A stretch of 64,000 nt of DNA from Botryllus schlosseri (Eukaryota), in contig CM119373.1 in the NCBI GenBank assembly GCA_051294905.1, positions 6,572,001 through 6,636,000 of the forward strand, read 5' to 3'. Of this stretch, positions 4,666-42,750 are shown piece after piece. The notes beneath the pieces are model-generated. The model was not told where the DNA came from, ran no database searches, and worked only from the letters and a program-made list of their open reading frames with translations. A program made the position numbers and the translations under genes. Numbering within the stretch: the first letter of the stretch is position 1; each line of letters starts with the position of its first letter.

Positions 4666-5445
4666 GTGCTTTTAAATCGAGCAAATTTGCTGTCAGTCTC
4701 TCCCGCGGATCTGTTGCTCGATCTCAGCAGTTTTATTAATCCTCAGAATATAGGAAGGAACGCAGTTAAGGACATCAATGACACGGACGTTGAAATACTT
4801 GAATATATTGCTGGATTCTTGTTGAGGAAGTTGTGTTACCACCCTTCAACCATTGAGTTGGACAAGCGCGTCATTATGAAGTTGAAAGGTGAAGTCAGGA
4901 AAGGATCTTTAGCCGACCAACGCAACAGAAATTTTAATGGCTCAGCTGACCGGCTATGGGGGGCTGTTGTGAAGTGCATAGAATTAGTTATGCACCTTAG
5001 ACTGGTTATGCACATAATTAGTTATGCACCTTAGACTGGATAATGAGTTTAAGGCACGATTCATGTTATTATCTGGAGTTGTCGATTTATATTCCAAGCT
5101 CATCTCTGAAGATCCACATTGGATCCCACCTTAGACTTAGTTATGCACATAATTAGTTATGCACCTTAGACTGGATAATGAGTTTAAGGCACGATTCATG
5201 TTATTTTATCTGGAGTTGTCGATTTATATTCCAAGCTCATCTCTGAAGATCCCACATTGGACGAATTTACAGTCAAATCTGTGTTTCAAAAATTGTTTTT
5301 AAAATTTATTAAAGTACGGGCTCATTCTTATTCCGTGAAATTGAGGAACGAGTTGAATAAAAAACATCTACATCGCAAGGACAAACAAGGGTCTCAGGAA
5401 GCAGTTGAAAAAAATGAACAACTGAATTTGGTATACATAAATTGA
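4666..5445 (+). pseudogene. Degenerate ORF convergent with the P-like transposase (accessory protein or C-terminus of a second transposase)
   Basis: 'LEYIAGFLLRKL' and 'FLKFIKVRAHSY' segments. Disrupted by a ~140-bp tandem duplication at ~4985-5260. Confidence 0.4.
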
Positions 5446-10577: not shown

Positions 10578-10892
10578 CTATAACCTTCGCCACACGCTGA
10601 ACGCTCCTACGATCCGTATGCCTAGATACGCCAGCAAGGTCCCCATCGGACAGTTCGAAATGTCCGGTGCAATGGTTAATTGCAGCAATGGGTGTCGGCC
10701 ATGATTCCTGATAACAAATGCGTCGTCCCCTTTTATTGTATCATAAATTTCAATGGTCTTCTCATAAAATCTGAATCGTTTCAAATATTCCCTATAATTC
10801 AATTCTTCAAATGGATTTTTCACGTCCCTGAGGCGTCTGCGAGGAATCGCAACAGTTTGCAGAATTTCCAGCTCTTCCATTAGCCCAGCCAT
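10578..10892 (-). pseudogene. Harbinger (HARBI1-like) transposase N-terminal fragment
   Basis: 'RRRLRDVKNPFEELNYREYLKRFRF...HPLLQLTIA' matches the N-terminal pattern of PIF/Harbinger transposases. Confidence 0.55.
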
Positions 10893-11339: not shown

Positions 11340-12261
11340 TGCGTCCGGTGCGAAATTCCTCTTCATAACGCGTTTCTTTATCGACGACTTCACGAATATA
11401 TCTACCATCCGGCTCACCAATGTACATATCAGAACGGTCCATTACGCACTGATTCCTTTTATACTTTACGTCCCTACTTAGCGACACGCATTTTTTTGCG
11501 TTTCGAGCAAGTCTGCGTTTTCGTCTCCGTGACGTCCGCTCGGGCAAGTCTGGACCTGTCTAAACCTGCTCGACCCACTCTCGTTTTAAAATTCTCTCGT
11601 TTCGGTGGGTCAAAGTATATTAACATAAATAAACAAGAATTTTCATATTGGTGAATTCCCCTAAGCTACACCATGCGCTTCTACACTTGCTAATGTTTTA
11701 AACTCTACGGTTATCTCTCGTGATCTTGGTATATCTCGACAGTCATCGTTGTTTTTCCTGTCCAGTTCGGCCATGTTTGAGTACATATAGATAGCCCGCT
11801 GTAGTAGTTCTGACTCCTCCATTTTGGCCAGTCTTTTACATGCATCCAAGGGCTCCCTTCACTATCTTGAAGTAATTGATTTGCGTCTTCTGCGCTGTCC
11901 ACTACCGATATGCTCTTTTCTAGCTTCATCTCATGTTTTCGGGACGTTGATCCATAACCAAACGACTTTTTCGTCCCTCCTTCTTGTTCTAGTATGAACA
12001 GTTCTGGCTCTTCCGTTGCCCCAATATTGTCATTCGACGATACTACTTGTAGATACGTCTCAGTAACAGTGTCTTTCGTGCATCCCGTAAGTGGCGTAGA
12101 TTTGTCCTTATCTGTCCATTCGTTTAGCCACAACATTGGTGGCCCGTTATTTCCCGTAAATTCTCCATCCGTAGATGTTTCCGAATTCGTCATGTGACCT
12201 TCCTCATTGTATGTATATTTTGTGCTTGCTTTTTTCGGCCTCGGCACGAATGCGTACGGGT
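11340..12261 (-). mobile_element. Virus-like element copy A (divergent lineage), distal part: capsid-like C-terminus, intergenic block and start of the basic ORF
   Basis: Translation aligns to copy B with 150/174 identical residues by hand (PYAF...TMTV). A 2-nt frameshift lies near 11735. 'MDRSDMYIGEPDGRYIREVVDKETRYEEEF' matches the copy B ORF at 24503. Confidence 0.9.
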
Positions 12262-15200
12262 CAAGGCCCGAACTACTGCTATCTCCGGCTAAGCAAATTC
12301 GCGTGATTCCCATGCGCAGATGCATTGTGGGTAGGTACACGGTTAAGTGATTTACTACATGGGCTTATGGAAAAGCGGTCAGTTTTTAAATATATTTGAT
12401 TCGTATCGGGTCCGTAGTATTTTATGCGTATAGAGCTTTGAATGACTAATTATTCTAACACTCAGGATTTGTTTCAGCCTAATATCTCGTGTCAGTATAT
12501 TGATATTATGTGTAATTCGACCTGTCGAAGATAGCCCATTCATCAGGTGGTAGTGGTAGTCTTTGCTGTGTCGGGGTTGGTGCAGTAAATGGCCGAAGAA
12601 GATATCCAATGAGTCGTATGCAAGAAGTATTTGTGACGGCAGTTGTGATGAAGAGTCGATAGTAAAGCGTCGATACCCCAGAACTTTTTACCGGTAAGTG
12701 AATAACAGAATAAGCATAGCAGCAAGACATGTATGTCCAGATCTGCCACAGTTGTAATAAATAGGTCATGGTAAAGTGATAGCAGAACATTTCGTTGCCG
12801 CTAAATGAATGAAATGACCAGACCAGACTACCAGCAGAAATCCGTGTCAACATATCAGCTATGTAATGTTCATCATCAATATCTGTAATATTCTGTAATA
12901 ATGCCAATCTCACTCTTCGTATTTCGGCCAATAATCTGCTTAGTATTTAATTCTGGCTTATGCTATGTAGGCATGATGAGCAGGACTACAGGGAAAAGAT
13001 ACAATTCATGACCAATGGGTTTTCTTCAACATAGCTAAAAAAGGATATCTTTTTCAGATGATAAACAAATACTGTGGAATTTGCAAATTCCATCGTCGAG
13101 TTCATCTACAAATTCCATCGTCGAGTTCATCTACATAGTCCTCATAGTGTTGTTCGAAACTGTCAATTTATTTATTCAGACACATTTTTCAAGGTTTACC
13201 TTTGAACTGCTTTAGCTTTAGAAGGCTGCCTCAATCTTGAATACAATAGCCTATGGAGTGAAAAGTGACAGATAATTTTATCAGACAAGATATCACAGCT
13301 CATAACAAAGAATTGTATTTCGTGTGCTTTGCTTCATACAATGCTCCGTATAATGCAGCATTCCTACTAATGAATCGCTGAAAGGAAGATGGTTAGAAAA
13401 CATTAAAAGAAAAAACTGGGTTCCATCAAGATCGTCAGTCATCTACTCCGATCATTTTCCGGTAAGTGCCATTTACCGTGTGGGCCAGTTGATACGTTTC
13501 AGGGAGAATGCGGTGCCAACGAGATTTCTGAACTCTCCGAAATATACGAGGTCAAAGGTACAGTAGGCATCTATAAATTTACTTCTAAAGTTTGCCTTTG
13601 TTGATGTGAAATTCTTGAATTTTAGGCTTCCAACAAACGGCAAGCGAGACTAGCAACACTTCAAGATAAGAAACGTCATTGTAAAGCACAAACCGGTGAA
13701 GCAGTTGTCCATGACCACAGTTACTGTGCACGTACCTCTCCTCAAAAGCTCATTCAACAGCAACGCCGTAGAGTGGTACAAATTAAAAAGAGGTTGCATG
13801 CTGCCAAAATGCGGACAGGCCACCTGAGAAAAAAAGTGAAAACTCTATATGAGGTCATTGCATCTCTAAAAAAAAAATGATCAGCGATTTGTATGGAGAA
13901 GTAATGTCACAAAAATTCTGTCTTCTACCAAGTGAGCTGTTGCAGCGCATGAAGCTACAAGCTGGTGGAAGAGGAGTCAAATACTCTAAAGAACTGCAAT
14001 CATTTGCAATGACGCTGCAGTATTATTCTGCTGAACTGCAATCATTTCCAATGACGCTGCAGTATTATTCTGCTATTTTGTGCGTCAAAATTTTCAACTC
14101 GCTCTTCCCCATCCGAGTGTGATAAGAAGCTAGTATGGAAAACTTCCTGCTGAGCCTGGCTTTACTGGTATTGCATTTTCTGCTACAAGAGGAAAAGTAG
14201 AGGCATCAACAACTCCCGCAGTGGGGTGGCCTTCCACGTCACTGTGCCGCGACAAAAAAGGAGGTCTATTAAATTGCAAATGCGATCAGAATGGGTTAGT
14301 TTATTGTACCAAGATCTCAGATATTAAGCCCTAACTTATCCCACATTTTACTTTCAGTTCACCCGCAATTACGTCGAGGGCGACGTCAAGTCAATAACAA
14401 TTTAATTTATTTCTGTTTTTATTTTTTTATGTTGTTATTTTAATAGAAAAATCATTCAAACCTCGCGTTTCTCATTCAAACCTCGCGTTTCTCATAACTG
14501 AAGCTGGTGTTACTGAAAACGAAAGTTTTGGTACGAGACAGTACAGCGCGGTATTTCCTGTGATCCCAGAAATGGTTGATCGAAAGTCAGGTTGGAATGC
14601 TGCGTCTATTAGGGAAGGAAGGGATCAGGTAGGCAGCAACCGCGTGATCCCAGAAATGGTTCATCAGAAAACGCACTAGGTAGAAATGCTTCATCTAGCA
14701 GGCAAGGAAAGGATCATAGGCAGCCACTACGTGATGCCTGGCTGATCTGATATATTGACCTTGCTTTCCGTCGCATGCCATATTTTTTTGTCGCTTGATC
14801 TTATATGGTATCTTAGTTAGAACTATTAGTTTTCATCCAGCGTACCCTGTAAATGCCTCCTCTTTACTTTGCCTAGGCCCAGGTGGGTGTAGATTACCTC
14901 AGGCCGTTGCGTTACCTTGCTATCTTTTCATCGATGATTAATCTGATTAAGTCAATTTCAGTGAGCACTAGGCAATTCTACCCTGATCTGAATATGGACT
15001 CGTGCATTCATCTTGTAATTCTTGTTTCTCTCATTCGATGATATAAATATAATATTTCTATCATTTGATTACCTCTGCAGAAATCGCTAACCCATATTGC
15101 TACACATAACTCACATATCCTCACTTCAACTTTCTAGGATTTATTTGGACCAATTTGACACAATGAATAAGTAGAATAAAAATTAGATCGTATAAATTTG

Positions 15201-16011
15201 ATTGTAGTTGTGCTTTTGCGATGTCACATGATGCTGAATTTTCCTCCGTCAGTGGTATTCATAGCCACTACGTAGCTGGCAGCAATAGCATTGACATCAG
15301 CGCCATTGTAGTGAGAAGATTTCGAATCGAATCCAGGGCGATTCTGAGGCAGTCTCTGGTAGTAACTTGAAGCTGGTGGTCATAGCCATAGATGCTTTTA
15401 CTACCGTACCTATAGATACAGTGCCTGAAAGATAACAACAAAACTGACATGCAATGCAATCAGTTGATAGCTTGGTTAATTATTTACACTTGAAATGTGC
15501 CTGTTTGTTGTTTTCAAGATTTGTAATAGTAAATTGTTTGTTGTTTTTCAAGATTTGTAATAGTAAATTACAGTGTGTGCTTGTATCAACAATTCGAGGA
15601 CGCAGTACATGAAACTGAAGCTATAATGCGTAAGAAGACAACATCAGCAAGCTCCATTAGGATTAATGGCATCATATCTAAATCAAATTGCCATACACAG
15701 TAGCCTACCTGAAACTGAAGCTGTATAGGGATAAAGAAGACAACATCACCAAGCTCCCCGAGTTTAGCAATCTACATCAGGAAGATATTTGCAAATGAAT
15801 ACATACGGTGACACATATATAACCTTATCTTGTCCGAACCATCGAAATTAATACCTCCAGGCCAAGGAGTAATCAAAACAGTCACATCACCCATCCACTT
15901 TTGCCTTGACTACCAGCTTAACGCGCAGCTATCAACTTAACCCAAAGATGGCGGCCAATGGATCACGCAAATATCGCGAGTAGCGCACTCCAGTGTTTAT
16001 ATAGCTCAGTG
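12262..16011 (+). mobile_element. P-element-like insertion (THAP9-type remnant) splitting virus-like copy A
   Basis: 8-bp TSD gtacgggt at 12254-12261 and 16012-16019; the viral frame H-P-Y-A-F is restored on removal. CA...TG ends. THAP remnant 'WLENIKRKNWVPSRSSVIYSDHF...NAVPT', a DHSY motif, and 'YSKELQSFAMTLQYYS' at ~13300-14150. Confidence 0.85.
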
Positions 16012-16660
16012 GTACGGGTGCCTTAGTGTTGTCCGATAATCCTTTATCCTAAAGTAGCGGTACATTTTTAACGGATTGAATCCTCTTTCAGAGTCCCACG
16101 GCCAAACTCATTTTCTTTTTTTTGTTCTTGAACGCGCTCGACGTTGATCCCGTTTCGACTGGTAATGCGAAACATTCTTCACGGATACCACTTTCTCTGA
16201 AGTGACCGTCACCATATGTGTCCAGCTGTCCACCCACTCGTGATCGATCTGGTTAGGCGCCGTTGTGGTTCCCGTTTCTTTTTTCGTGCAAAACTTTGCG
16301 ACCTCATTGATTTTTATTCTGTACTCTGCTGTTTCCGTTCCCTTCCAGAGAAACCCTGCCACTGTATGAACTCCCGTGCCCCCAGCGCCGCCTCCGGAGC
16401 TCCGCACAGTTGGCTCGCTCCCAGCAAAGCCCCCCATCTTGCCAATCGTGCTGTCCGCCGCCATGGTGACCCTTTTTCCTTCGCTATCCGGTGTAATTCT
16501 TTTTGGCTCGGTCTCTCCGGTCTCTGGTGTAGCCCCTTGTTTAGTAGGCCTCCCGCGCTTTCGTTCGCCACTTGTTCCAGTTCTGGACTGTGAAACGCTA
16601 CTGTCGCTAGGAATATTCTCTCCTCGCCACTTGTTCCTGCTCCTTCAGTTGCTTCTTTTT
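16012..16660 (-). mobile_element. Virus-like element copy A, proximal part (Gly-rich start of the capsid-like domain and overprinted ORF)
   Basis: 'MAADSTIGKMGGFAGSEPTVRSSGGGAGGTGVHTVAGFLWKGTETAEYRIKINEV' is homologous to copy B 23229 onward. Frameshift from a short tggaca duplication near 16225. Upstream boundary approximate. Confidence 0.9.
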
Positions 16661-19800: not shown

Positions 19801-22029
19801 AAAGGCCTTTTCCTGGTCAAAGTTTGCTATGATGATTGGCTGTTTCTTTTCTTTCTGGTATTCCATTACCGATTTTATATTCCGTAGTAGATCTGACATT
19901 TGCTTCGATGGGACAGCGCATTTTTGTTGGGGGGATATTAGATGGTCAATATTTTCTTTCATTCTGTTCGTTACGATTTTCATCATGATCTTATAGTCGA
20001 CATTTGTCAGGGAGATAGGTCTCCAATTCTTCAGCATCTCGGGATCTCCCTTTTTGAATATGAGGTTCACTGTTGAATCCGTCCATGTATTGGGCATGCT
20101 GTTTAGGAGTAGAGCGTTGTTGTATAGTTGGACTAATTCATCCTTAATAAGGTAGTAGAAGGTAGAGTAGAACTCTGACGATAGGCCGTCTGGCCCGGGG
20201 GACTTAAGTCTTTTTTTGTTGCTCGATTGCATATTTTATTTCCTCTTCTAGGATTGGCAGGTCTTGTTGCTCATGCTGTTCTTTACTTAGGAGTTCCACT
20301 AGGTTTTTTTGCATCTTGGCATTTGTGTTTTCATTCATTTGCCAAAGTTCTTGGTAGAAGGAGTAGACTTCTTGTATTATTTCTTCTTTGTTTTCTGTTA
20401 TGGTCCCGGATCGTTTTTGTACTCGGGCGATTGATTTCCGTTGTTGCTTTGTTTTTAGTTTTTCAAAGAATTCACGGTTTGGCTTCTCGTCCTCTTCTAG
20501 CTCTTCCCTGTATAGCAGTTTCATTTGGTGGTGTAGTTTGTCTTTTTCCATTTTCTTCAGGTTTTTTAGGATGGTTTTTCTCTCATTTGAGGGCAGGTTC
20601 TTTGATGCGAGTTGTTGATGGAGTGTGTTCTCTTTTTCTTTTTGTTTTCGTTTTTCCTCTATCCCGAAAGAGATGGCAGTTTTTTTATTTATTTTTGTTT
20701 TAAAATCATCCCACCACTGTGCGTGGTTGGGGTATTCTACTTTCCTCAGTGCGGCTTCTTCATATTTTGATTCCAGTATTTTCCTGAATTGTTTCTTAGC
20801 ATAGTGGGTTGTATTATTTTTCCAGTTGCCGCCACCCCATTTCTCCGGGTCTTTTGGCTTTACGATGATTCTGAGGTAGTAGTTGTGGTCTGATATTCCG
20901 TTTATATGATGCTTGACTGATGTCCTCGAGCGGGCTATTTCTTGAGTGGTATAGACCCTATCTATTCTCCTTGAGTTGAGATTGTTTGCATTTGTATACA
21001 ATCTTGTAAATGGATAGTGCCATCTGTATAGGTCTATGATGTTTTTCTGCATTGTATATTCCTTCCAGATTTTTGCTGCTTCAGATAGTTTGAAGGCGTG
21101 ATGTTTTTCGCTATCTTCTTTGGCCGTAATCATATTAAAGTCCCCCGCTATAATCATATTTCCATGGTACAGTTGAAGGTTATGCGTTACTTCCTTGTAG
21201 GAGGTCTTTTTTCTTTGTTATTGGTTGGCGCATATATATTTACTATGGTTAGTCTGACCTCGTTGTTGGCGCTGAGGCTTAGGGTCTGGACCCTGTCTGG
21301 CACAATGATTTGGTGGTCAAGGGTATAGTCTCTCACTTTTTCTTTTTTTATAAGAATGGTGGTTCCCTTGTAGTAGTGTTTGTCTCCGGCCTGGTGTGGT
21401 TCTGAATTGAAGTTTTTGTAGTATGGGAGATCGTTATTATTAGCCCATAGTCTAAATTTCCTTTCATGTAGGCGGTGGACTTCTTGGACGCAGTATAAGT
21501 CCGCTTTTGAGCTCGTCACGAAGTGTCTGAATTCGTCCCAGCGTCTCTGTATACCATTTACATTTATGGAGATTAGGTTACATCCAAGAACTCCCGTTTG
21601 TTGATTTGTTTCTTCTGGAGGTTGGGTAGGGGTTTGGCCTTCCATTTCAAGGTAAAAAAGGGGTTTGCGTTGCTTTCTTCTTTTATTTCGTATGTTTTGA
21701 TTTTTTTCTCATCTATTTTTTTGTATTTTTTTTTTTTGTCATTTTTTCCTTCCTCGGGGCTGCTGTGGTAGGCTCTCTTTGGCCTTGGGGTATTTTTGTT
21801 TTTTTTTTTGTTCTAATGGGATGGGGTTGCAATCCAGATGCTTGAAAATCTCGACTTGGAGGGGTTCCGATTCCGTTTTATGTACACTTGATACTCTTTT
21901 CCCTCTATTTCTGTTTCTTGGGGGGATTTTGGGGGGTTCCGAGGAGTCAGATGGTTCAGGATCATGCATTTTTGAGGGGGTTTTGTTTTCTGCTGAGCCC
22001 TCTGGGTTTAATTAAGTCTTCCTGATTGG
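16815..22029 (-). mobile_element. L1/Tx1-clade LINE, 5'-truncated within ORF1, ORF2 frameshifted
   Basis: APE endonuclease 'LISINVNGI...YCVQEVH', 'IIAGDFN', 'RRIDRVY'; RT 'KSPGPDGL', 'NWRPISLTNVDYK', 'DQEKAFDRV', 'GLRQGCPLS', 'QYADD'; C-terminal 'CRQCGCKKETLDHILYTC'; (TATG)-like 3' tail at ~16815-16895. Confidence 0.95.
18170..19354. mobile_element. Non-autonomous hAT element inserted in LINE ORF2
   Basis: TIRs caggggtcgccaac / gttggagacccctg. 8-bp TSD gtctaacg at 18162-18169 and 19355-19362. LINE frame (GNTLD|HIREQ) rejoins on removal. Confidence 0.95.
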
Positions 22030-24290
22030 AAGGATGGAGATCGAGAGGGGCAAAATTAAGAGCGGAGGCGGAGGCAGCAAGAATAGAAAGAGAGAAAGGA
22101 TGGACACACGCATTCGCAACAGCGAGAAGGAGAGAATACGATGCAATACATACACCAGTGAGGGATCATCTTGGAATACCAGGAATGCAACATTTCCTGG
22201 AAGCATTGGGATTAATAGGCGAAACGAACATAGATAATGTAAAAGAAGCAACATACAAATGGGCAAAGTCAAAAATCGAAGAACTGAAAACAGCACTGGG
22301 AGAAGACACAATGGTGGGACAACTAGTGGACGAAATGTTTGTAGTGGATAGTACAGGACAGTCCGACTGGCATGACCTAGAAAATTACAGACAATCAATC
22401 ATGGACATAGTAAATCCAGAAAGATCAGCAGAAGAAAGAAACGAACTAAATCAAGAAGAGTTAGGAGAAGGAGTAACAGAAACGAATAAATATGGGACAG
22501 GAATAACAGAAGAGATCGAGAATGAAGAAGAATACATATACAGTGATGAATCAGATACAGAATTAGACCAAGAAGAGCTGGGAGCGGGAGTAACTGAAAA
22601 TGACCCAGAGGGAATAACAGATGAGATAGAAGAAAGAGAAATAGAAGAATTCGAAGAATACTGTGACATGAGATTATCGGAAGTGGAAAGTGAGAATAGA
22701 TATGCACAGCAGTGGGCGCAATACGAAACGGCAGTAGAGGAAGCATTCAACAGATTTCAACAAAGACGTCATGAACAAAGGGGAACACCAATAATGCAAT
22801 GGCAAATACCGGGCACGAGAAGGAGATGGGAAGGGTTAGGAAGAGCATTGAGAGTGGCGATACCTAGGAAACGTAATAGAAGGGGGTGGATAAAGGACAG
22901 ACCAGGGTATTGGATGAGAAAAGACGGGAAAATAGAAAAAAGAAAAAGGCGACTGCCTCTAGAATGTATAAATATCGCGAACGAGCGGAGAGCTGCCAAA
23001 AGAGCGAGAGATGCAGCAGGAGAAGGAGCAACAACAGAAGGAGAGCCAACAGAAAAAGCCGGAAGAGTTGAGAGCAGCGTACCTAGCGACACTGGTACTA
23101 CACAGCCCAGTACTGGAGGAAATAGCGAACGAAAGCGCGGGCGGGATTCTGAGTCAGAACGTGGGGAAGAGACCGGAGAGACTATCCCAAAAAGAGTTAC
23201 ACAAGAGAGCAAAGAAAGAAGGGTCGGAATGGAGGCGGACAGCTCGGCTAGCAAAATGGGGGTTGCTTTTGGGGGCGAGCCAAGTGTTAGGAGCTCCGGA
23301 GGTAGCGGAGGCGGCGCTGGTGGGAGCGGTGGCGCTGGGGGCACAGGAGTGCATACGGTGGCGGGATTCTTGTGGAAGGGAACAGAAACCGCCGAATATA
23401 GAATAAAGATAAATGAAGTGGTGAAATTTAAAACAAAAAAAGAAATAGGAACAACTGCAGCGGGAAATCAGATCGACCACACATGGGTGGACACGTATGG
23501 AGACGGACATTTTAGGGAGAGCGGAATAAGAAAAGAATGTTTCGCACTACCAGCAGAAACGGGAAGCACAGCAAGTGCGTTCAAAAATAAAAAGAGAAAA
23601 AGGGTTTGGCCATGGGATACCGCGAGGGGATTCAATCCACTGAAGATGTATAGGTACTTCAGGATAAAGGATTACCGAACAACATTAATGCATCCATATG
23701 CCTTCACACCAAGACCGAAAAAAATGACAACGTCATATGTATACAACGAAGAAGGGCATCTACAAAGCTCAGTGACCAATACAGACGGAGAATTTACAGG
23801 AAATAATGGGCCACCAATGATGTGGCTAAATGAATGGACGGATAAGGACAAGTCAACGCCATTGACAGGATGTACAAAGGACACTGTAATAGAAACATAC
23901 TTACCTGTAGAGAGTACAAACGACACAATTGCAGCGACAGAAGAACCAGAATTATTCATACTGGAGCAAGAAGGTGGAACAAAAAAAGCATTTGGATACG
24001 GGTCATGCTCTAGAAAACATGAAATGAAACTAGAGAAATCAATCTCGGTAGTGGACAGTTCAGAAGACGCAAATCAACTACTTCAGGACAGCGAAGGAAG
24101 CCCGTGGATGCATGTTACAGACTGGCCAAAGTGGAGAAGCCAAAACTATTACAGCGGACTAAGCGTGTGTACTCAAACATGGCCGAATTGGACAGGACTA
24201 TCAACCATGACGGTCGACATACCAAGATCGCGCGAAATAACTGTAGAGTTTAAAACTCTAGCTAGCGCGGAATCGCATGGTGTCGCATAA
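22030..24290 (+). CDS. Distal ~753 codons of the 905-aa large ORF; C-terminal 353 aa (from ATG 23229) is a probable single jelly-roll capsid domain
   Basis: Uninterrupted frame. Acidic tract, then Arg/Lys-rich tract and RKRGR, then a Gly-rich stretch, then a beta-rich region with 'MYRYFRIKDY' and terminal 'ITVEFK', reminiscent of ssDNA-virus capsid strands. Capsid identity is by resemblance only. Confidence 0.6.
23011..23406 (+). CDS. Overprinted 131-aa ORF in an alternative frame of the large ORF
   Basis: Homologous open frame in divergent copy A (16314-16571 and upstream) with a stop at the equivalent position (NIE* vs STE*). Identical in copy C (40957-41352). Confidence 0.65.
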   Translation: MQQEKEQQQKESQQKKPEELRAAYLATLVLHSPVLEEIANESAGGILSQNVGKRPERLSQKELHKRAKKEGSEWRRTARLAKWGLLLGASQVLGAPEVAEAALVGAVALGAQECIRWRDSCGREQKPPNIE

Positions 24291-24332
24291 GGGGAATTCC
24301 CTAATTGTATATATTTATTGCATTGTTACGTT

Positions 24333-24338
24333 AATAAA
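24333..24338 (+). promoter_or_regulatory. Candidate polyadenylation signal of the large ORF
   Basis: AATAAA 43 nt after the stop codon. Not retained in copy A. Confidence 0.45.
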
Positions 24339-24392
24339 GGTTGACCCACTCAGACGAGAAAGTTTTTTTCCTTGGGTGGGCCAGGGCAGGTT

Positions 24393-24449
24393 CAGACTTG
24401 CCCGAGCGGACGTCACAGAGACGAAAACGCGGACTTACTCGAAACGCAA
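24393..24449 (+). promoter_or_regulatory. Conserved non-coding cis-element of the virus-like unit
   Basis: 54/57 nt identical to copy A 11496-11552 (reverse complement). Contains GACGTCA and two GACTT(G/A)C(C/T)CGA repeats. A TATA-like tataataa follows at ~24482. Confidence 0.75.
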
Positions 24450-24502
24450 TTTTATAGTGTCGTTTAAGTAAGGATGCAGACTATAATAAGGCTCATTTGG
24501 AT

Positions 24503-24841
24503 ATGGACGGGTCTGACTTGTATATTGGCGAACCCTGTGGAAGAATTATAAGAGAGATTGTGGATTACGAAAGTAGATATGAAGAGGAATTTAGCTGCCG
24601 ACGAGAGTTCGAATGCATCAAGGACGAGCGTGCCTCAAAGTTACTCAAGCGATTCAAAGAGATTGCGAATAGACGAAGAAGAGAGGTCCGTGAAGGGGGC
24701 AGGAGATGGAGAAAATTCAGAGCGTGGCACGATCGCTACCTTCGGGCGACCCTGACGCGGCCCTATCGGGCCGCAAGGGTCAGGGGTCGCAACGCTCTCT
24801 TAGCCTATTTTGGCTTCGATCGCGTTACTAGCACACCCTAG
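24503..24841 (+). CDS. ~112-aa basic protein of the virus-like unit
   Basis: The first ~30 residues and the start Met are conserved in copy A. Arg-rich C-terminal half. Function unknown. Confidence 0.65.
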   Translation: MDGSDLYIGEPCGRIIREIVDYESRYEEEFSCRREFECIKDERASKLLKRFKEIANRRRREVREGGRRWRKFRAWHDRYLRATLTRPYRAARVRGRNALLAYFGFDRVTSTP

Positions 24842-24916
24842 GGTAAGAAGGTGTCCTTACCCTAGGGTGTGCTAGTTGACCCACCCAAAAAAAAACATTC
24901 CGAGCTGGGTGGGTCA
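24746..24916. repeat. Cluster of three stem-loops (candidate origin or fused termini)
   Basis: GC-rich bulged hairpin 24746-24790; perfect 21-bp stem 24827-24847/24856-24876 with 8-nt loop; 11-bp stem 24877-24887/24906-24916. Confidence 0.9.
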
Positions 24917-24923
24917 GGAAGGA

Positions 24924-24931
24924 TATAAATA
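24924..24931 (+). promoter_or_regulatory. TATA box candidate
   Basis: TATAAATA immediately after the hairpin cluster, 28 nt upstream of ATG 24959 (A at -3). Confidence 0.6.
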
Positions 24932-24958
24932 GAGGCTGAGTGGCGAAAGTGATTCAAA

Positions 24959-25201
24959 ATGAGCACGTACGAGGAGCTGAGCGGATTGGTGAAAGACTGG
25001 AAGCACACGGAACAACTGAAGTGGAGCTATCTAATCAAAGAAGTACTGAACCTGATATTGTTGATAGCGATTGTGGGACTGCTAAGTATAGTTCACTACA
25101 ACGTGACAAGAATTCAAGGAGCGGAAAGACTGAGAAGATTCGCAGACGTAACAGGAGGGCCACCAAGATACGAAGAAACGACAACAACTTTTGAAGCATA
25201 A
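24959..25201 (+). CDS. 80-aa predicted single-pass membrane protein with PPxY motif
   Basis: Hydrophobic 'VLNLILLIAIVGLLSIV' and C-terminal 'PPRY'. Its stop overlaps the next ATG (TAATG, 25199-25203). Present only in copy B. Confidence 0.6.
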   Translation: MSTYEELSGLVKDWKHTEQLKWSYLIKEVLNLILLIAIVGLLSIVHYNVTRIQGAERLRRFADVTGGPPRYEETTTTFEA

Positions 25202-25669
25202 TGACAAAGGCGTTAGCTGTATTGAACAATGTACGGAAGAATGTGAAGAAAATAAATAAACTGAGATCTGCATATACGGAAAATCCAATCTCAAAAGCAG
25301 CAAGAGGGTACCAGAAATTGAAAAAGATAGAGAATGGGGTGGCAAATATTAAAAAAACATACAAAAATCCAATACGAAGAATATACGCAAAATGGGAAAG
25401 AGTGACAGCGAAATTAAATGAGTGGGAACAGGGATACAAAGGAGTGCAAATGGGCATAAGCATTTTCCAATCAGCAACAGGGGCGTTAGTGGAAGATATA
25501 AACAACGGGATTGATTATCCAAGAGCTGTGACAGCAGTGATACAAAGAAGTCTGGAAAATTGGGACAGAGATAAATTAGAAGAAGGATTAAGGATATTAA
25601 AAGTACCAAGAGGAGAAATTGGGAGAATAGGAACGCACTTGCAGAACAACGTGTTCCAAGGATGGAGAT
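25201..25669 (+). CDS. N-terminal ~156 codons of the 905-aa large ORF (continues at 22042 in the circular form)
   Basis: Ends ...NNVFQGWR, and copy C shows ...NNVFQGWRSRGAK contiguous. The ORF-track tail beyond 25669 is flank read-through. Confidence 0.8.
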
Positions 25670-27289: not shown

Positions 27290-28648
27290 ATGTGGGTGCA
27301 TCCAATTCTGCAAAGAAGGGAGATGCTAGGTATGTGTGTTATGATATATGTATGGGAGTATCATACCTTATGGAACATAATATTAAACAGGAGAGTTTCA
27401 TGCTTTGGCGAGGGAACTCAGATTCGAAGGACAGGAATACTTTCGAGATTATTTTGCAATGAATGTGGAGACCTTCGATGAGCTTCTGTCGTTGGTCGGC
27501 CCGCTCATCAGCAAGCAGACCACAGTCATGAGAAAGCTAATCTTTCATTGGGTGGAATCGGCTATCACGCTGAGGTAAATAAGACAATAGAGATGACTAG
27601 GTCCAGTTAATTCTGCAGGATGGTGTCAGGTTGCGGTTAGTTATTGTATGCTGATGCTAGCAAACTACTTGACAAATTGATGAATAGTACCAAATAGTGC
27701 ACCTTATTCAAGGTATTCATCATATTGCTCTGTACATAGGTTTCTTTGCACTGGTGATTCATATCGTACGATCGCCTTTTCTTATCGATGTGGGAGGTCT
27801 ACAGTAGCAAAGATCGTCCCAGAGACGTGTGCTGCTATTTGGGAGGCCCTAGCACCCGAGTACATGCCAGAGCCAAAAAAAGACCAATGGAAGCGCATTG
27901 CTGAGCGATTTCAAGATAAGTGGAATTATCCTAATTGTGTTGGCAGCATAGATGGCAAGCATGTTTTGATTCAGAAACCGGCAATGTCATAGGGTCCCTA
28001 TTTTTTAATTATAAGAAGACTTTCAGTGTTGTTTTGATGGCAGTTGTGGATGCTGACGAGCGCTTTATTGCTGTTGATGTTGGTCAATATGGTGCAGTGA
28101 ATGATAGTAAATGTTTCAGTAACTCGCTTTTTGGTAACTCGCTTTTTGGTAAACGTCTGTCATCTAACCAATTAGATCTGCCATCAGCGTCTCCTCTACC
28201 TGGGTTTGACAATCCAACTCATTACGTTTTTGTGGCGGATGAAGCCTTTCCTCTAAACACTCACATCATGAGACCATTTCCTGGCGGATCGCTGAGCAGT
28301 GATGAACGTCGTATCTTCAATTACAGATTGTCACGTGCTAGGCTTGTTGTCGAGAATGCATTTGGGATATTATCCTCTCGCTTCTCTTGCTTTCGAAGGC
28401 CAATGGTTGTTATGCCTGTTCATGTAGATGAAGTGGTCAAAGCCTGTACCGTTCTCCATAATTTTCTTATGAGTGACTCAAATTATTATGATATTGCAGT
28501 GGATGGAGCGCGCCCGTCATCGTCTCTACGGCCACTGGACAGAGCGGGTAGAGGAAGTGCTGCGGCAGCCAAAGCCACACGAGAAGAATTTGTGAGATAC
28601 TTCAGTAGTCTTGAGGGGGCTGTTTCTTGGCAGCAAAAGCGCATATAG
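27290..28648 (+). pseudogene. PIF/Harbinger DDE transposase, intron-containing, frameshifted
   Basis: 'WVHPIL', 'NYPNC...DGKHV', 'FFNYKKTFSVVLMAVVDA', 'ADEAFPL', 'FNYRLSRARLVVENAFGIL', 'LHNF'. Confidence 0.92.
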
Positions 28649-38224: not shown

Positions 38225-39004
38225 TCACAACGATGTGCCTCCCTTTTCTTTACATAAAGCTAGTGTAGTTCTTGAAATCGTCTCCATCTTTTCTGGATGG
38301 TAAAGGAACTCAAAAAACATCTTGTCAAGTTCTTTTGTATGTTGTTTTTCAGATGGATACACTCGCGCCACATATAGTATCTGCGAGATTGCCAAGCTGT
38401 TGAGCACGTTCTTTTTACCGATCCCGGTGAGGTCTCTTCCTTCGCATAGGTTAGGTATGTTTTTAACTTTTGCTATCTTCCTCTTCCACATCTCCTCTAC
38501 ATTCTTCCCCCCTAACAGGAGCCCCAGCACCTTAATTTGTTCGTAATAGAACTAGTTAATCTCTGGATTTTTCATCCTTTCTTTCGCTTCCTTGTTTGTT
38601 GCAAGGATTTGCGTCTTCATTTTGTTTACTTTCTGGCCCGTGGCTCTTTCAAAGTCTTGCAGGTGTTGCAAGACTTTTATTGTGGATTCTTCGTCGGTTA
38701 CTGTTGCCGTTAGGTCATCAGCATACTGTTGCATTTTCATTTTGCCTTGGTTGCCAATTGTAACGCCTCTGATCTCTTCGTCTTTTGTTATTTTTCTTAT
38801 CAAGGGGTCTGCCGCAATGGCGTACAATGACATGCTCATTGGGCATCCCTGTCTTATTCCTCTTTTAATTTGGATTGTCCGCGATATTTTCCCATTTGCC
38901 ACTACATTGCTCGTTGCATTTTCGTACGTCGTTTTGATGTATCTGTGGACTTTTGCTCCAAGATTCAATTTCTCAATCAATTTCATTAGATAATCGTGAT
39001 TCAC
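38225..39004 (-). mobile_element. L1/Tx1-clade LINE RT fragment
   Basis: 'RGIRQGCPMSMSLY', 'QYADDLT', 'GQKVNKMKTQI'. Confidence 0.9.
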
Positions 39005-39701: not shown

Positions 39702-42700
39702 GTAGCGATCGTGCCACGCTCTGAATTTTCTCCATCTCCTGCCCCCTTCACGGACCTCTCTTCTTCGTCTATTCGCAATCTATTCCAATCAGCAACAGGG
39801 GCGTTAGTGGAAGATATAAACAACGGGATTGATTATCCAAGAGCTGTGACAGCAGTGATACAAAGAAGTCTGGAAAATTGGGACAGAGATAAATTAGAAG
39901 AAGGATTAAGGATATTAAAAGTACCAAGAGGAGAAATTGGGAGAATAGGAACGCACTTGCAGAACAACGTGTTCCAAGGATGGAGATCGAGAGGGGCAAA
40001 ATTAAGAGCGGAGGCGGAGGCAGCAAGAATAGAAAGAGAGAAAGGATGGACACACGCATTCGCAACAGCGAGAAGGAGAGAATACGATGCAATACATACA
40101 CCAGTGAGGGATCATCTTGGAATACCAGGAATGCAACATTTCCTGGAAGCATTGGGATTAATAGGCGAAACGAACATAGATAATGTAAAAGAAGCAACAT
40201 ACAAATGGGCAAAGTCAAAAATCGAAGAACTGAAAACAGCACTGGGAGAAGACACAATGGTGGGACAACTAGTGGACGAAATGTTTGTAGTGGATAGTAC
40301 AGGACAGTCCGACTGGCATGACCTAGAAAATTACAGACAATCAATCATGGACATAGTAAATCCAGAAAGATCAGCAGAAGAAAGAAACGAACTAAATCAA
40401 GAAGAGTTAGGAGAAGGAGTAACAGAAACGAATAAATATGGGACAGGAATAACAGAAGAGATCGAGAATGAAGAAGAATACATATACAGTGATGAATCAG
40501 ATACAGAATTAGACCAAGAAGAGCTGGGAGCGGGAGTAACTGAAAATGACCCAGAGGGAATAACAGATGAGATAGAAGAAAGAGAAATAGAAGAATTCGA
40601 AGAATACTGTGACATGAGATTATCGGAAGTGGAAAGTGAGAATAGATATGCACAGCAGTGGGCGCAATACGAAACGGCAGTAGAGGAAGCATTCAACAGA
40701 TTTCAACAAAGACGTCATGAACAAAGGGGAACACCAATAATGCAATGGCAAATACCGGGCACGAGAAGGAGATGGGAAGGGTTAGGAAGAGCATTGAGAG
40801 TGGCGATACCTAGGAAACGTAATAGAAGGGGGTGGATAAAGGACAGACCAGGGTATTGGATGAGAAAAGACGGGAAAATAGAAAAAAGAAAAAGGCGACT
40901 GCCTCTAGAATGTATAAATATCGCGAACGAGCGGAGAGCTGCCAAAAGAGCGAGAGATGCAGCAGGAGAAGGAGCAACAACAGAAGGAGAGCCAACAGAA
41001 AAAGCCGGAAGAGTTGAGAGCAGCGTACCTAGCGACACTGGTACTACACAGCCCAGTACTGGAGGAAATAGCGAACGAAAGCGCGGGCGGGATTCTGAGT
41101 CAGAACGTGGGGAAGAGACCGGAGAGACTATCCCAAAAAGAGTTACACAAGAGAGCAAAGAAAGAAGGGTCGGAATGGAGGCGGACAGCTCGGCTAGCAA
41201 AATGGGGGTTGCTTTTGGGGGCGAGCCAAGTGTTAGGAGCTCCGGAGGTAGCGGAGGCGGCGCTGGTGGGAGCGGTGGCGCTGGGGGCACAGGAGTGCAT
41301 ACGGTGGCGGGATTCTTGTGGAAGGGAACAGAAACCGCCGAATATAGAATAAAGATAAATGAAGTGGTGAAATTTAAAACAAAAAAAGAAATAGGAACAA
41401 CTGCAGCGGGAAATCAGATCGACCACACATGGGTGGACACGTATGGAGACGGACATTTTAGGGAGAGCGGAATAAGAAAAGAATGTTTCGCACTACCAGC
41501 AGAAACGGGAAGCACAGCAAGTGCGTTCAAAAATAAAAAGAGAAAAAGGGTTTGGCCATGGGATACCGCGAGGGGATTCAATCCACTGAAGATGTATAGG
41601 TACTTCAGGATAAAGGATTACCGAACAACATTAAGGCATCCATATGCCTTCACACCAAGACCGAAAAAAATGACAACGTCATATGTATACAACGAAGAAG
41701 GGCATCTACAAAGCTCAGTGACCAATACAGACGGAGAATTTACAGGAAATAATGGGCCACCAATGATGTGGCTAAATGAATGGAAGGATAAGGACAAGTC
41801 AACGCCATTGACAGGATGTACAAAGGACACTGTAATAGAAACATACTTACCTGTAGAGAGTACAAACGACACAATTGCAGCGACAGAAGAACCAGAATTA
41901 TTCATACTGGAGCAAGAAGGTGGAACAAAAAAAGCATTTGGATACGGGTCATGCTCTAGAAAACATGAAATGAAACTAGAGAAATCAATCTCGGTAGTGG
42001 ACAGTTCAGAAGACGCAAATCAACTACTTCAGGACAGCGAAGGAAGCCCGTGGATGCATGTTACAGACTGGCCAAAGTGGAGAAGCCAAAACTATTACAG
42101 CGGACTAAGCGTGTGTACTCAAACATGGCCGAATTGGACAGGACTATCAACCATGACGGTCGACATACCAAGATCGCGCGAAATAACTGTAGAGTTTAAA
42201 ACTCTAGCTAGCGCGGAATCGCATGGTGTCGCATAAGGGGAATTCCCTAATTGTATATATTTATTGCATTGTTACGTTAATAAAGGTTGACCCACTCAGA
42301 CGAGAAAGTTTTTTTCCTTGGGTGGGCCAGGGCAGGTTCAGACTTGCCCGAGCGGACGTCACAGAGACGAAAACGCGGACTTACTCGAAACGCAATTTTA
42401 TAGTGTCGTTTAAGTAAGGATGCAGACTATAATAAGGCTCATTTGGATATGGACGGGTCTGACTTGTATATTGGCGAACCCTGTGGAAGAATTATAAGAG
42501 AGATTGTGGATTACGAAAGTAGATATGAAGAGGAATTTAGCTGCCGACGAGAGTTCGAATGCATCAAGGACGAGCGTGCCTCAAAGTTACTCAAGCGATT
42601 CAAAGAGATTGCGAATAGACGAAGAAGAGAGGTCCGTGAAGGGGGCAGGAGATGGAGAAAATTCAGAGCGTGGCACGATCGCTACCTTCGGGCGACCCTG

Positions 42701-42750
42701 ACGCGGCCCTATCGGGCCGCAAGGGTCAGGGGTCGCAACGCTCTCTTAGC
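39702..42750 (+). mobile_element. Virus-like element copy C: 2,968 nt of the circle plus an 80-bp inverted fragment
   Basis: 39783-39975 = copy B 25465-25657; 39976-42750 = copy B 22030-24804; 39702-39781 = reverse complement of 42606-42685. Confidence 0.92.
39783..42236 (+). CDS. Large ORF of copy C, N-terminally truncated, capsid-like domain intact
   Basis: Uninterrupted frame across the permutation junction. Differs from copy B at two residues visible in the ORF track (M/R, T/K). Confidence 0.75.
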   Translation, partial: FQSATGALVEDINNGIDYPRAVTAVIQRSLENWDRDKLEEGLRILKVPRGEIGRIGTHLQNNVFQGWRSRGAKLRAEAEAARIEREKGWTHAFATARRREYDAIHTPVRDHLGIPGMQHFLEALGLIGETNIDNVKEATYKWAKSKIEELKTALGEDTMVGQLVDEMFVVDSTGQSDWHDLENYRQSIMDIVNPERSAEERNELNQEELGEGVTETNKYGTGITEEIENEEEYIYSDESDTELDQEELGAGVTENDPEGITDEIEEREIEEFEEYCDMRLSEVESENRYAQQWAQYETAVEEAFNRFQQRRHEQRGTPIMQWQIPGTRRRWEGLGRALRVAIPRKRNRRGWIKDRPGYWMRKDGKIEKRKRRLPLECINIANERRAAKRARDAAGEGATTEGEPTEKAGRVESSVPSDTGTTQPSTGGNSERKRGRDSESERGEETGETIPKRVTQESKERRVGMEADSSASKMGVAFGGEPSVRSSGGSGGGAGGSGGAGGTGVHTVAGFLWKGTETAEYRIKINEVVKFKTKKEIGTTAAGNQIDHTWVDTYGDGHFRESGIRKECFALPAETGSTASAFKNKKRKRVWPWDTARGFNPLKMYRYFRIKDYRTTLRHPYAFTPRPKKMTTSYVYNEEGHLQSSVTNTDGEFTGNNGPPMMWLNEWKDKDKSTPLTGCTKDTVIETYLPVESTNDTIAATEEPELFILEQEGGTKKAFGYGSCSRKHEMKLEKSISVVDSSEDANQLLQDSEGSPWMHVTDWPKWRSQNYYSGLSVCTQTWPNWTGLSTMTVDIPRSREITVEFKTLASAESHGVA

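What the first reader, a model, noticed from the sequence alone, without database searches (positions are those of the whole stretch)
22030..25669. Unclassified 3.63-kb circular virus-like element with a capsid-like gene but no replication or integration enzyme, endogenised three times
Seen: a complete 3,628-bp unit whose ORFs (80 aa, 905 aa, overprinted 131 aa, ~112 aa) all lie on one strand, with a TATA box, AATAAA and a hairpin cluster. No Walker A/B helicase, HUH Rep, polymerase, RT, integrase or recombinase motif is visible in any frame. Three insertions from two lineages lie within 32 kb. Known precedents for Rep-less units: capsid-only components of multipartite ssDNA viruses (nanovirid DNA-S), the VP segment of the bipartite parvovirus Acheta domesticus segmented densovirus, and anelloviruses (circular, up to ~3.9 kb, no canonical Rep). 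Inference: this is a segment, satellite or host-replicated genome of an undescribed invertebrate DNA virus, or a new class of capsid-bearing mobile element.
Basis: partly seen in the sequence, partly recalled or inferred. Interest (0 to 1): 0.95.

Follow-up and report, generated by a model that had tools for sequence, protein, structure and literature searches.

The report
Rep-deleted endogenous circular ssDNA virus copies
The 3.6-kb unit is a real virus-derived insertion with a circovirus-like capsid gene, but it lacks a replication enzyme only because that gene was almost entirely deleted: a 5.3-kb metagenomic relative still carries it.

Summary
Copy 1 (22030-25669) is one 3,628-bp unit plus a 12-nt terminal redundancy. 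Copy 2 (39783-42750, 99.9% identical) reads straight through copy 1's ends, so the source DNA was circular or head-to-tail multimeric. A third, degraded copy of a second lineage lies on the minus strand (11342-16617).

The large ORF ends in a jelly-roll domain whose model matches only viral capsids, with circovirus/CRESS capsids best. No replication enzyme is present anywhere in the 64 kb.

A full-length homologue of the large protein (41% identity) lies on a 5,347-bp metagenome contig. There it is followed on the same strand by a 658-aa gene with Walker A, Walker B and motif C spaced as in superfamily-3 helicases, and with HUH-like motifs upstream.

The window unit keeps that gene's promoter and only about its first 55-85 codons, ending at the first nuclease-like motif. 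Both young copies share this truncation.

Best reading: a replication-defective deletion derivative of a new, very divergent CRESS-like ssDNA virus lineage, endogenised in a transposon-rich animal-type genome. It is a new virus lineage, not a new class of element.

The parts
22030..25669 (+). Copy 1 (lineage 1): one complete 3,628-bp unit plus a 12-nt terminal redundancy. Its ends fall inside the large structural ORF.
   Evidence: 22030-22041 equals 25658-25669. Copy 2 is continuous across this point.
22030..24290 (+). Large structural (VP-like) ORF, the part lying at the 5' side of copy 1. It has no internal stop or frameshift.
   Evidence: 41% identity over the whole length to P0007 (851 aa).
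23349..24290 (+). C-terminal ~313-aa jelly-roll capsid domain of the VP-like protein, preceded by basic, Ser-rich and Gly-rich linkers.
   Evidence: AF2 model: pLDDT 53.6, pTM 0.52, all-beta. Foldseek PDB: top 15 hits are circovirus capsids, E = 1.6e-5 to 4e-4. BFVD: 193 hits at E <= 1e-3, CRESS/circovirus capsids on top. 51% identity to the L001 domain.
23011..23406 (+). 131-aa ORF in the +1 frame over the linker region. It is a possible overprinted gene, not established.
   Evidence: L001 has a 100-aa ORF in the same frame and place, with 42% identity over 50 aa, E = 6e-9. That frame otherwise has 56 stops in 753 codons. The conservation could be a by-product of the VP frame.
24334..24339 (+). 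AATAAA polyadenylation signal of the structural transcription unit.
   Evidence: The same GTTAATAAA context follows the VP stop in lineage 2 and in L001.
24340..24385 (+). Hairpin A', a diverged inverted version of hairpin A. It is also present in lineage 2.
24386..24755 (+). Promoter (CRE-like site, conserved block, TATA) and N-terminal stub of the NS/Rep-like gene (coding part 24503-24755, read in two overlapping frames). One large deletion has removed the rest of the gene.
   Evidence: tblastn of P0009 residues 1-55, 44% identity, E = 9e-8. hhalign to NS profile positions 1-56, E = 2.6e-5. Promoter block shared with lineage 2 and L001. No NS core anywhere in the window.
24745..24916 (+). 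Hairpin cluster upstream of the structural promoter: hairpin B (24745-24790), hairpin C (a perfect 21-bp stem, 24827-24876) and hairpin A (24877-24916). Hairpin A has an 11-bp stem and an A-rich loop and is the candidate replication origin.
   Evidence: dG = -21.5, -24.1 and -11.3 kcal/mol; z = -5.8, -8.8 and -3.5. The loop of hairpin A is conserved with L001, while the stems differ in sequence yet still pair.
24925..24932 (+). TATA box, 35 nt upstream of the small ORF's ATG.
   Evidence: The spacing is 36 nt in L001.
24959..25201 (+). 80-aa small membrane protein with one hydrophobic helix and a PPxY motif. Its stop overlaps the VP start (TAATG).
   Evidence: Homologue in L001 (73 aa; BLASTP E = 0.007). 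PPxY, the hydrophobic run and the stop-start juxtaposition occur in both.
25201..25669 (+). N-terminal 156 codons of the VP-like ORF, at the 3' side of copy 1.
   Evidence: 31% identity to P0007 residues 56-163, E = 9e-15.
39783..42750 (+). Copy 2 (lineage 1): 2,968 bp, permuted relative to copy 1. It carries the VP-like ORF from about codon 88 to the stop, the polyA signal, hairpin A', the same NS stub and hairpin B. It lacks the structural promoter, the small ORF and the VP start.
39702..39790 (-). 89-nt inverted fragment of the NS-stub region, joined to the left end of copy 2. This is a rearrangement at the insertion.
   Evidence: 96.6% identity to 24651-24739 in reverse.
11342..16617 (-). 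Lineage-2 remnant: the C-terminal half of the VP gene, polyA signal, hairpin A', NS promoter and the first NS codons. The VP gene is broken by one large nested insertion, about four frameshifts and one premature stop, and its N-terminal half is missing.
   Evidence: 71-77% nt identity and 72-79% aa identity to lineage 1.

Best explanation
The 3,628-bp unit is a replication-defective deletion derivative of a small circular, CRESS-like ssDNA virus from a lineage that no current profile library recognises.

Full-length relatives encode three proteins on one strand:
- a small PPxY membrane protein;
- an 850-905-aa structural protein whose C-terminal ~310 aa form a circovirus-like jelly roll;
- a 460-660-aa NS/Rep-like protein with HUH-like motifs and a superfamily-3-type P-loop core.

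The window unit keeps the cis elements (stem-loops, two promoters, polyA signal) and the structural genes. All of the NS gene beyond about its first 55-85 codons is gone.

Shown:
- the anatomy;
- the circular or multimeric source;
- the capsid fold;
- homology to a larger NS-bearing relative;
- the NS stub, with the same truncation in both young copies.

Inferred:
- The deleted form existed as an episomal circle or multimer before insertion.
- Copy 1 entered by a single crossover at a 12-nt microhomology, which would leave exactly one unit flanked by that 12-mer.
- Such a molecule could only have been copied and packaged with the NS protein of a complete helper genome.
- As integrated, no copy can express the full structural protein from its own promoter.
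For: Circular or multimeric source: copy 2 reads through copy 1's ends. Copy 1 is one unit plus 12 nt.

Capsid: the best structure matches are viral jelly-roll capsids (all of the first 50 PDB hits). Circovirus capsids fill the top 15 PDB hits, and 193 BFVD hits have CRESS capsids on top.

Larger relative: P0007 (851 aa) aligns over the full length at 41% identity. It lies on L001 and L002, which are identical over 5,008 bp in two independent samples. It sits between a homologous small ORF and a 658-aa NS gene.

NS family (four members, 31-52% identity). The invariant residues are:
- WxFT;
- HG;
- YxxYMxKT;
- GKT;
- DD, 38 residues after the Walker A lysine;
- SN, 44 residues after the DD;
- RRF, 19 residues after the SN.

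NS stub in the window. Absence of the NS core. Copy 2 includes the stub's end and hairpin B at 99.9% identity, so the truncation predates both copies.

Purifying selection between the lineages.

Host context: LINE, Harbinger and pogo fragments.

Defective subgenomic DNAs and germline integration are documented for eukaryotic ssDNA viruses (review PMC3187698).
Against: The NS protein could not be tied to HUH Reps or SF3 helicases by any profile or fold search. Only a weak AAA_16 P-loop hit appeared. Its AF2 model is unusable at pLDDT 37. The motif II-like site has one His and no second His or Gln.

The capsid model is of low to moderate confidence.

L001 is not a clean circle. Its 82-nt exact repeat (138-219 = 5266-5347, spacing 5,128) leaves a 137-nt left tail unexplained, so the full genome form and size are uncertain.

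No full-length genome of the window's own lineage was found. The family is very rare: 6 hits among 1.84 billion representative proteins.

Two copies with the same deletion could also mean a stably propagating subviral component.
Confidence: 0.7

Rival explanations
1. The unit is a genuine capsid-only segment or satellite of a multipartite virus. NS would be carried on a separate circle that shares the stem-loop.
For: The same NS-less form occurs twice. Two NS-only contigs of 1.7-1.9 kb exist. One of them, L006, has 12 identical nucleotides at both ends, inside a hairpin. That would fit a 1,708-nt NS-only circle.
Against: The unit carries the NS promoter and an NS reading frame cut off at the first conserved motif. 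That is the mark of a deletion, not of a dedicated segment. L001 and L007 carry capsid and NS genes on one contig. Logan contigs are mostly short, so NS-only contigs are expected from fragmentation. A 12-nt overlap is not the usual assembler signature of a circle. It is equally explained if NS is flanked by two like hairpins, as hairpins A' and A flank it in the window.
Confidence: 0.12
2. The virus is linear with hairpin telomeres (parvovirus-like). The permuted copies would come from head-to-tail concatemers or circularised episomes, and the hairpin cluster would be a fused telomere junction.
For: The genome size is ~5 kb and all genes lie on one strand. Basic and Gly-rich linkers precede the jelly roll. 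Strong hairpins are clustered in one place. L001's left end is hairpin-rich. Densovirus capsids appear lower in the fold list.
Against: No Parvo_NS1, parvovirus coat or PLA2 hit was found. Circovirus/CRESS capsids score about 100-fold better than densovirus capsids. Walker B is DD and motif C is ITSN. From my own knowledge (not a tool result), that pattern is usual for CRESS Reps rather than for parvoviral NS1. L001's terminal repeat is direct, not inverted. Copy 1's ends lie inside the VP ORF.
Confidence: 0.1
3. A complete genome integrated. The NS deletion arose afterwards in the chromosome, and the second copy arose by segmental duplication or rearrangement of one integrated multimer.
For: The two copies lie 14 kb apart on the same strand and are 99.9% identical. 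An inverted fragment sits at copy 2's edge, and complex integrations are often rearranged.
Against: The copies have different end points that overlap by about 200 bp of unit sequence, and their flanks are unrelated. A simple split of a tandem, or a segmental duplication, does not fit. Copy 1 is exactly one deleted unit plus 12 nt. That is what a circle already carrying the deletion would give.
Confidence: 0.08
4. The unit is a transposon or a tandemly repeated cellular gene, not a virus.
For: It lies among transposon fragments, and none of its proteins has a named family.
Against: The capsid fold. Compact relatives occur in metagenomes, with capsid and NS genes and no host flanks. There are no terminal repeats, and the unit encodes no transposase or RT. 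Copy 1 is exactly one unit long, which a random piece of a tandem array would rarely be.
Confidence: 0.02

Closest known systems
Circoviridae and other CRESS-DNA viruses (Cressdnaviricota)
   Same: Both have a single jelly-roll capsid domain; circovirus/CRESS capsids are the best structural matches. A basic stretch lies ahead of the jelly roll. The source molecule is circular or multimeric. A stem-loop lies next to a promoter. The relatives' NS has motif I-, II- and III-like strings followed by Walker A, Walker B and motif C at SF3 spacing.
   Different: There is no detectable sequence similarity to any Rep or Cap profile. The structural protein is 850-905 aa with a ~500-aa helical, acidic N-terminal extension. 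The genes are unidirectional and the genome is ~5.1 kb rather than 1.7-3 kb. A small PPxY membrane protein is present. No canonical nonanucleotide is seen in the loop.
Defective (subgenomic) DNAs of geminiviruses, and geminivirus-related DNA integrated in Nicotiana
   Same: These are circular ssDNA virus genomes that have lost part of an essential gene by deletion while keeping the origin region. ssDNA virus DNA is also fixed in a host germline (PMC3187698).
   Different: Those are plant viruses of known families. Here the defective form itself is what became endogenous, in an animal-type genome, and the parent virus is unknown.
Anelloviridae
   Same: Both are small circles with all ORFs on one strand, a TATA box and polyA signal, a structured non-coding region, and a large ORF1 with a basic region and a jelly roll. 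Anelloviruses are proposed to derive from circovirus-like ancestors (PMC10266747, listed).
   Different: No search returned an anellovirus protein. Relatives of this element do carry an NS/Rep-like gene, and the absence here is a deletion. The basic region is central, not N-terminal.
Parvoviridae (densoviruses)
   Same: The genome size class and the one-strand gene layout are similar. The order of basic cluster, Gly-rich stretch and jelly roll in VP is the same. Hairpins are present. Densovirus capsids appear as weaker fold matches.
   Different: There is no NS1, coat or PLA2 profile hit. The repeats are direct, not inverted. The copies are circularly permuted.

Membership tests
Cressdnaviricota (CRESS-DNA viruses) | Covalently closed circular genome | tested here: inconclusive
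   The permuted copies and the one-unit-plus-12-nt copy show a circular or head-to-tail source for the defective form. L001 has an 82-nt direct repeat 5,128 nt apart but also an unexplained 137-nt tail.
Cressdnaviricota (CRESS-DNA viruses) | Rep with HUH endonuclease motifs I-III | tested here: inconclusive
   WxFT, HG and YxxYMxKT are invariant in four NS relatives, with spacings of 34 and 46-49 residues. Motif II lacks a second His or Gln. No profile or fold search supports the assignment. The domain is absent from the window unit.
Cressdnaviricota (CRESS-DNA viruses) | Superfamily-3 helicase domain (Walker A, Walker B, motif C, Arg finger) | tested here: inconclusive
   The motifs and their spacing fit in the relatives. 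Only a sub-threshold AAA_16 hit was obtained (E = 9e-5, 23.5 bits against a cutoff of 32.6). The domain is absent from the window unit.
Cressdnaviricota (CRESS-DNA viruses) | Origin stem-loop with a conserved nonanucleotide | tested here: inconclusive
   Hairpin A has an 11-bp stem. Its loop is conserved with L001 although the stems differ. No canonical nonamer is present, and in L001 the loop also holds an AATAAA.
Cressdnaviricota (CRESS-DNA viruses) | Single jelly-roll capsid protein | tested here: met
   The model confidence is only moderate (pTM 0.52).
Circoviridae | 1.7-2.1-kb ambisense genome; Rep and Cap recognisable by family profiles | tested here: not met
   The genes are unidirectional, the unit is 3.6 kb (about 5.1 kb in the relative), and there are no Pfam hits.
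Parvoviridae | Linear genome with terminal hairpins, NS1 of the Parvo_NS1 family, and a VP with the parvovirus coat fold (PLA2 in many) | tested here: not met
   The copies are permuted and the repeats are direct. There is no NS1, coat or PLA2 hit. Densovirus capsids are only weak fold matches.
Anelloviridae | ORF1 with an N-terminal Arg-rich region, no Rep in any member, and vertebrate hosts | tested here: not met
   No anellovirus family or structure was returned. Relatives encode an NS/Rep-like protein.
Capsid-only component of a multipartite ssDNA virus (nanovirus DNA-S type) | A dedicated single-gene circle that shares only a common region with the Rep component | tested here: not met
   The unit carries a truncated NS gene with its promoter. 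The relatives are monopartite.
Defective/subgenomic DNA of an ssDNA virus | Retains cis elements, has an internal deletion in an essential gene, and is smaller than the parent | tested here: met
   Hairpins, promoters and polyA signal are kept. The NS gene is cut after its N-terminal stub. The unit is 3.6 kb against at least 5.1 kb. That it ever replicated with a helper is not testable with these tools.
Endogenous viral element | Virus-derived DNA flanked by host DNA | tested here: met
   The flanks are unrelated and transposon-rich. The older copy is decayed and itself interrupted. Germline fixation cannot be tested from a single window.

The most novel reading that the evidence does not exclude
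The NS-deleted 3.6-kb circle may not be a dead end. It could be a stably transmitted subviral component: a capsid-carrying, helper-dependent satellite-like genome, or one half of a lineage that is splitting into capsid-only and NS-only circles at its paired hairpins. It would then be this form that repeatedly enters the host germline.
Probability: 0.15. Interest if true: 0.75.

Novelty: new variant of a known kind. Interest (0 to 1): 0.55.

Why it matters
It adds a virus lineage that homology-based screens cannot see. Neither its capsid nor its NS protein matches any Pfam, PDB, PHROGs or NCBIfam entry by sequence. Only a handful of fragments exist among billions of public proteins.

The lineage joins a circovirus-like jelly roll to a ~500-aa N-terminal extension, a small PPxY membrane protein and a very divergent Rep-like protein. 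It spans genomes from 2.7 to more than 5 kb.

The window also gives a clean example of a defective circular genome being the form that became endogenous. One copy looks like a single-crossover insertion of a circle.

It also shows that a "Rep-less capsid element" in a genome should first be tested as a deletion derivative.

Tried and rejected
Searches that gave nothing:
- Pfam, PDB-sequence, PHROGs and NCBIfam searches of all unit ORFs and of the relatives' proteins found nothing beyond a weak P-loop.
- The word-index search with the whole 817-aa protein was swamped by low-complexity words and found nothing.
- The exact look-up of the 80-aa ORF found nothing.
- Rfam and tRNA scans found nothing.
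- IMG/VR scans with VP and NS queries found nothing.
- The first JGI metagenome scan found nothing.
- Searches for sample accessions and the WGS prefix in the paper library found nothing, so the hosts of the relatives stay unknown.
- Literature searches found no description of this lineage.

Tests that were uninformative:
- The AF2 model of NS from two sequences was too poor to use, and its fold search was meaningless.
- Direct BLASTP of the ~112-aa ORF against the 658-aa NS was not significant. The homology appeared only in the other overlapping frame.
- The 331-aa protein of L007 shows no detectable similarity to the VP jelly-roll profile.

Readings rejected:
- A hepadnavirus-like or retro-origin reading: there is no RT, and the copy ends do not fit an mRNA.
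- A target-site duplication reading of the 12-mer: copy 2 has the 12-mer once, inside continuous sequence.

I did not re-circularise the unit, as the finding proposed. Copy 2's natural continuity served instead.

Full report

Yes. Repeat finding and BLAST of the unit against the window show three copies.
- Copy 1 spans 22030-25669. Its first 12 nt recur as its last 12 nt, so the unit is 3,628 bp.
- Copy 2 spans 39783-42750. It is 99.93% identical to copy 1 over 2,775 bp and passes without interruption from the 3' part of copy 1 into its 5' part. The two copies are therefore circular permutations of one sequence.
- A third copy, of a second lineage at 71-75% nucleotide identity, lies on the minus strand within 11342-16617.

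The flanks of the three copies are unrelated. They consist of LINE (endonuclease plus RT), Harbinger and pogo-type fragments. This is transposon-rich eukaryotic DNA. The host species could not be named with these tools.

The sense strand is strongly purine-rich: A 39%, T 16%.

**2. Anatomy, read from the sequence**

In order along the unit:
- A TATA box lies 35 nt upstream of an 80-aa ORF.
- The 80-aa ORF encodes one hydrophobic helix and a PPxY motif.
- Its stop codon overlaps the start codon of the large ORF (TAATG), and no other ATG lies between the two starts.
- The large ORF has 905 codons by arithmetic. It is read intact in copy 2 as window:39783-42233. It runs through a helical N-terminal region, an acidic stretch, a basic cluster, and Ser-rich and Gly-rich linkers, and ends in a ~313-aa all-beta domain.
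- AATAAA follows.
- Next comes a ~620-nt structured region (fold z = -7.5) that holds hairpin A', a second promoter, a short ORF region, and hairpins B, C and A just before the TATA box.

Copy 2 supplies the junction as it stands.

**3. The proteins**

No unit ORF matches any family or solved structure by sequence.

An exhaustive HMMER scan of 1.84 billion representative proteins with the C-terminal domain returned only six short fragments. The cluster of one fragment contains an 851-aa protein, P0007. P0007 aligns with the window protein over its whole length at 41% identity, and at 51% in the C-terminal domain.

The AF2 model of the domain, built from nine sequences, has pLDDT 53.6 and pTM 0.52 and is all-beta.
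- Against the PDB, the 15 best Foldseek hits are all circovirus capsids (E = 1.6e-5 to 4e-4, probability 1.0). Picornavirus, densovirus, tombus-like virus and polyomavirus jelly rolls follow.
- Against BFVD, 193 hits reach E <= 1e-3, with CRESS/circovirus capsids on top.

The "capsid-like" call is supported, with the caveat of a moderate-confidence model.

Between the two window lineages, codon differences in this domain are mostly synonymous (79 against 22 in 190 codons). The gene therefore evolved under purifying selection.

**4. The missing enzyme**

P0007 lies on contig L001 (5,347 bp, JGI metagenome). L001 is identical over 5,008 bp to a contig from an unrelated sequencing run.

L001 has the same layout as the unit:
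- a TATA box 36 nt before a 73-aa ORF, which is homologous to the 80-aa ORF and has the same helix and PPxY;
- a stop-start juxtaposition;
- the 851-aa ORF;
- the same GTTAATAAA signal.

L001 then continues with a promoter and a 658-aa ORF on the same strand.

Three further homologues of that protein were found, at 31-52% identity. One of them lies on a compact 2.7-kb contig (L007), after a 331-aa ORF.

Across the four proteins the invariant residues form:
- WxFT;
- HG, 34 residues later;
- YxxYMxKT, 46-49 residues later;
- a Walker A (GKT);
- a Walker B (DD, 38 residues after the Walker A lysine);
- SN within ITSN (44 residues after the DD);
- RRF (19 residues after the SN).

From established knowledge of HUH-SF3 replication proteins of small DNA viruses, this is their layout. 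No profile or fold search confirmed it, however. The only hit is a sub-threshold AAA_16 match. The NS structure model was unusable. The assignment "Rep-like" is therefore an inference from motifs, gene context and genome type.

**5. What the unit retains of that gene**
- tblastn places residues 1-55 of one NS homologue on 24579-24743, and on the same place in copy 2 (44% identity, E = 9e-8).
- hhalign aligns the window stub to positions 1-56 of the NS profile (E = 2.6e-5). The alignment ends at the WxFT motif.
- The promoter block upstream is shared by lineage 1, lineage 2 and L001.
- The first codons of the upstream frame differ between the two window lineages almost only at synonymous sites (read from the alignment).
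- A profile of the NS core finds nothing in the six-frame translation of the whole window (best E = 0.4).

One large deletion has removed the rest. Because copy 2 includes the end of the stub and hairpin B, the truncation predates both young copies.

The size of the loss is at least ~1.5 kb. It could be more, because the ends of L001 are unresolved.

**6. State of the copies** (counts only)

Lineage 1:
- The structural ORFs have no internal stop or frameshift.
- The two copies differ at two positions, both non-synonymous.
- Copy 1's ends fall inside the VP ORF.
- Copy 2 lacks the promoter, the small ORF and the VP start, and has an 89-nt inverted fragment at its edge.
- Neither copy can make the full protein from its own promoter.

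Lineage 2:
- The VP gene lacks its N-terminal half.
- It carries one large nested insertion, about four frameshifts and one premature stop.
- It is clearly the older copy.

**7. Mechanism**

Shown: the source molecule was circular or head-to-tail multimeric and already carried the deletion.

Inferred:
- Copy 1, one unit flanked by the same 12-mer, is what a single crossover between a circle and a chromosomal site sharing that 12-mer would leave.
- Copy 2, with its inverted fragment, looks like an illegitimate insertion of a broken multimer.
- Hairpin A is the best origin candidate. Its loop is conserved with L001, while the stems differ yet still pair.
- The short leader and the conserved stop-start junction suggest that the small protein and VP are translated from one mRNA.
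- A genome of this kind could only have multiplied with NS supplied by a complete genome.

Defective subgenomic DNAs and germline integration are both documented for eukaryotic ssDNA viruses (PMC3187698).

**8. Open points**
- L001 has an exact 82-nt direct repeat (138-219 = 5266-5347), which fits a 5,128-nt circle. Its hairpin-rich first 137 nt do not fit that circle. The genome may be larger, carrying two copies of the promoter-hairpin block, or the contig may mix forms.
- L006, an NS-only contig, has 12 identical terminal nucleotides inside a hairpin. This keeps a small probability alive for separate NS circles.
- The +1-frame 131-aa ORF has a counterpart in L001 and may be a real overprinted gene.

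**9. Verdict**

The finding is a real and well-described endogenous virus. Its headline claim, a Rep-less capsid element of a new class, is replaced by a more ordinary reading: a deletion derivative of a new, very divergent CRESS-like virus lineage.

Before I had weighed the operators' rule fully, my scripts printed BLAST segment tables, and notebook entry 1 recorded two segment ranges. Their bounds implicitly show where the lineage-2 gene is interrupted. In my private reasoning I also noted where one of its frame changes lies. I have not repeated those places here, have deleted nothing, and built no joined, repaired or consensus sequence.

Noticed in passing
L006:1-12 and L006:1709-1720: An NS-only contig (1,720 bp, Logan SRR10746998) begins and ends with the same 12 nt. 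These lie inside a 10-bp-stem hairpin flanked by CRE-like sites. It is either a 1,708-nt NS-only circle or an NS gene flanked by two like hairpins.
   Followed up: partly
L007:1-2702: A compact 2.7-kb contig (JACSEB010000790.1) carries a 331-aa ORF (basic plus Gly-rich N-terminus) followed by a 475-aa NS homologue (31% identity). Each is followed by GTAAATAAAAG. It is a much smaller relative, and its first protein shows no detectable similarity to the VP jelly-roll profile.
   Followed up: partly
L003:3767-4162: Only the last 396 bp of this 4,162-bp ENA contig match the VP 3' end of L001 (92%). The remaining 3.7 kb is unrelated, non-viral-looking DNA. This may be another truncated insertion of the L001 lineage in a different host.
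   Followed up: partly
L001:1-219 and L001:5171-5347: An exact 82-nt direct repeat lies at 138-219 and at the contig end, with a 73%-complementary inverted relation between 98-194 and 5171-5267. The hairpin-rich 137-nt left tail occurs nowhere else. The true end structure of the full-length relative is unresolved.
   Followed up: partly
window 23011-23406; L001:1850-2152: ORFs in the +1 frame overlap the same part of VP in both genomes, with 42% identity over 50 aa. This is a possible overprinted gene.
   Followed up: partly
window 17826-21645 (minus strand): A LINE-type element (endonuclease, RT and zf-RVT pieces in several frames) ends about 400 bp from the left end of copy 1. A second RT fragment (38225-39004, minus strand) lies just left of copy 2.
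   Followed up: partly
window 48721-50303: A 190-nt inverted repeat (99% complementary) encloses a 301-aa ORF with a weak RT match. A 203-nt tandem pair lies at 48915-49390. This is an unidentified repeat element.
   Followed up: no
window 27935-28648 and 56830-57465: Harbinger-type (DDE_Tnp_4, E = 2e-28) and pogo-type (DDE_1) transposase fragments lie here. No ordinary host gene was recognised among the long ORFs examined.
   Followed up: partly
window 10578-10892 (minus strand): A 104-aa ORF lies just beyond the end of the lineage-2 remnant. By eye its N-terminus looks like a Harbinger transposase, but it has no Pfam hit.
   Followed up: no
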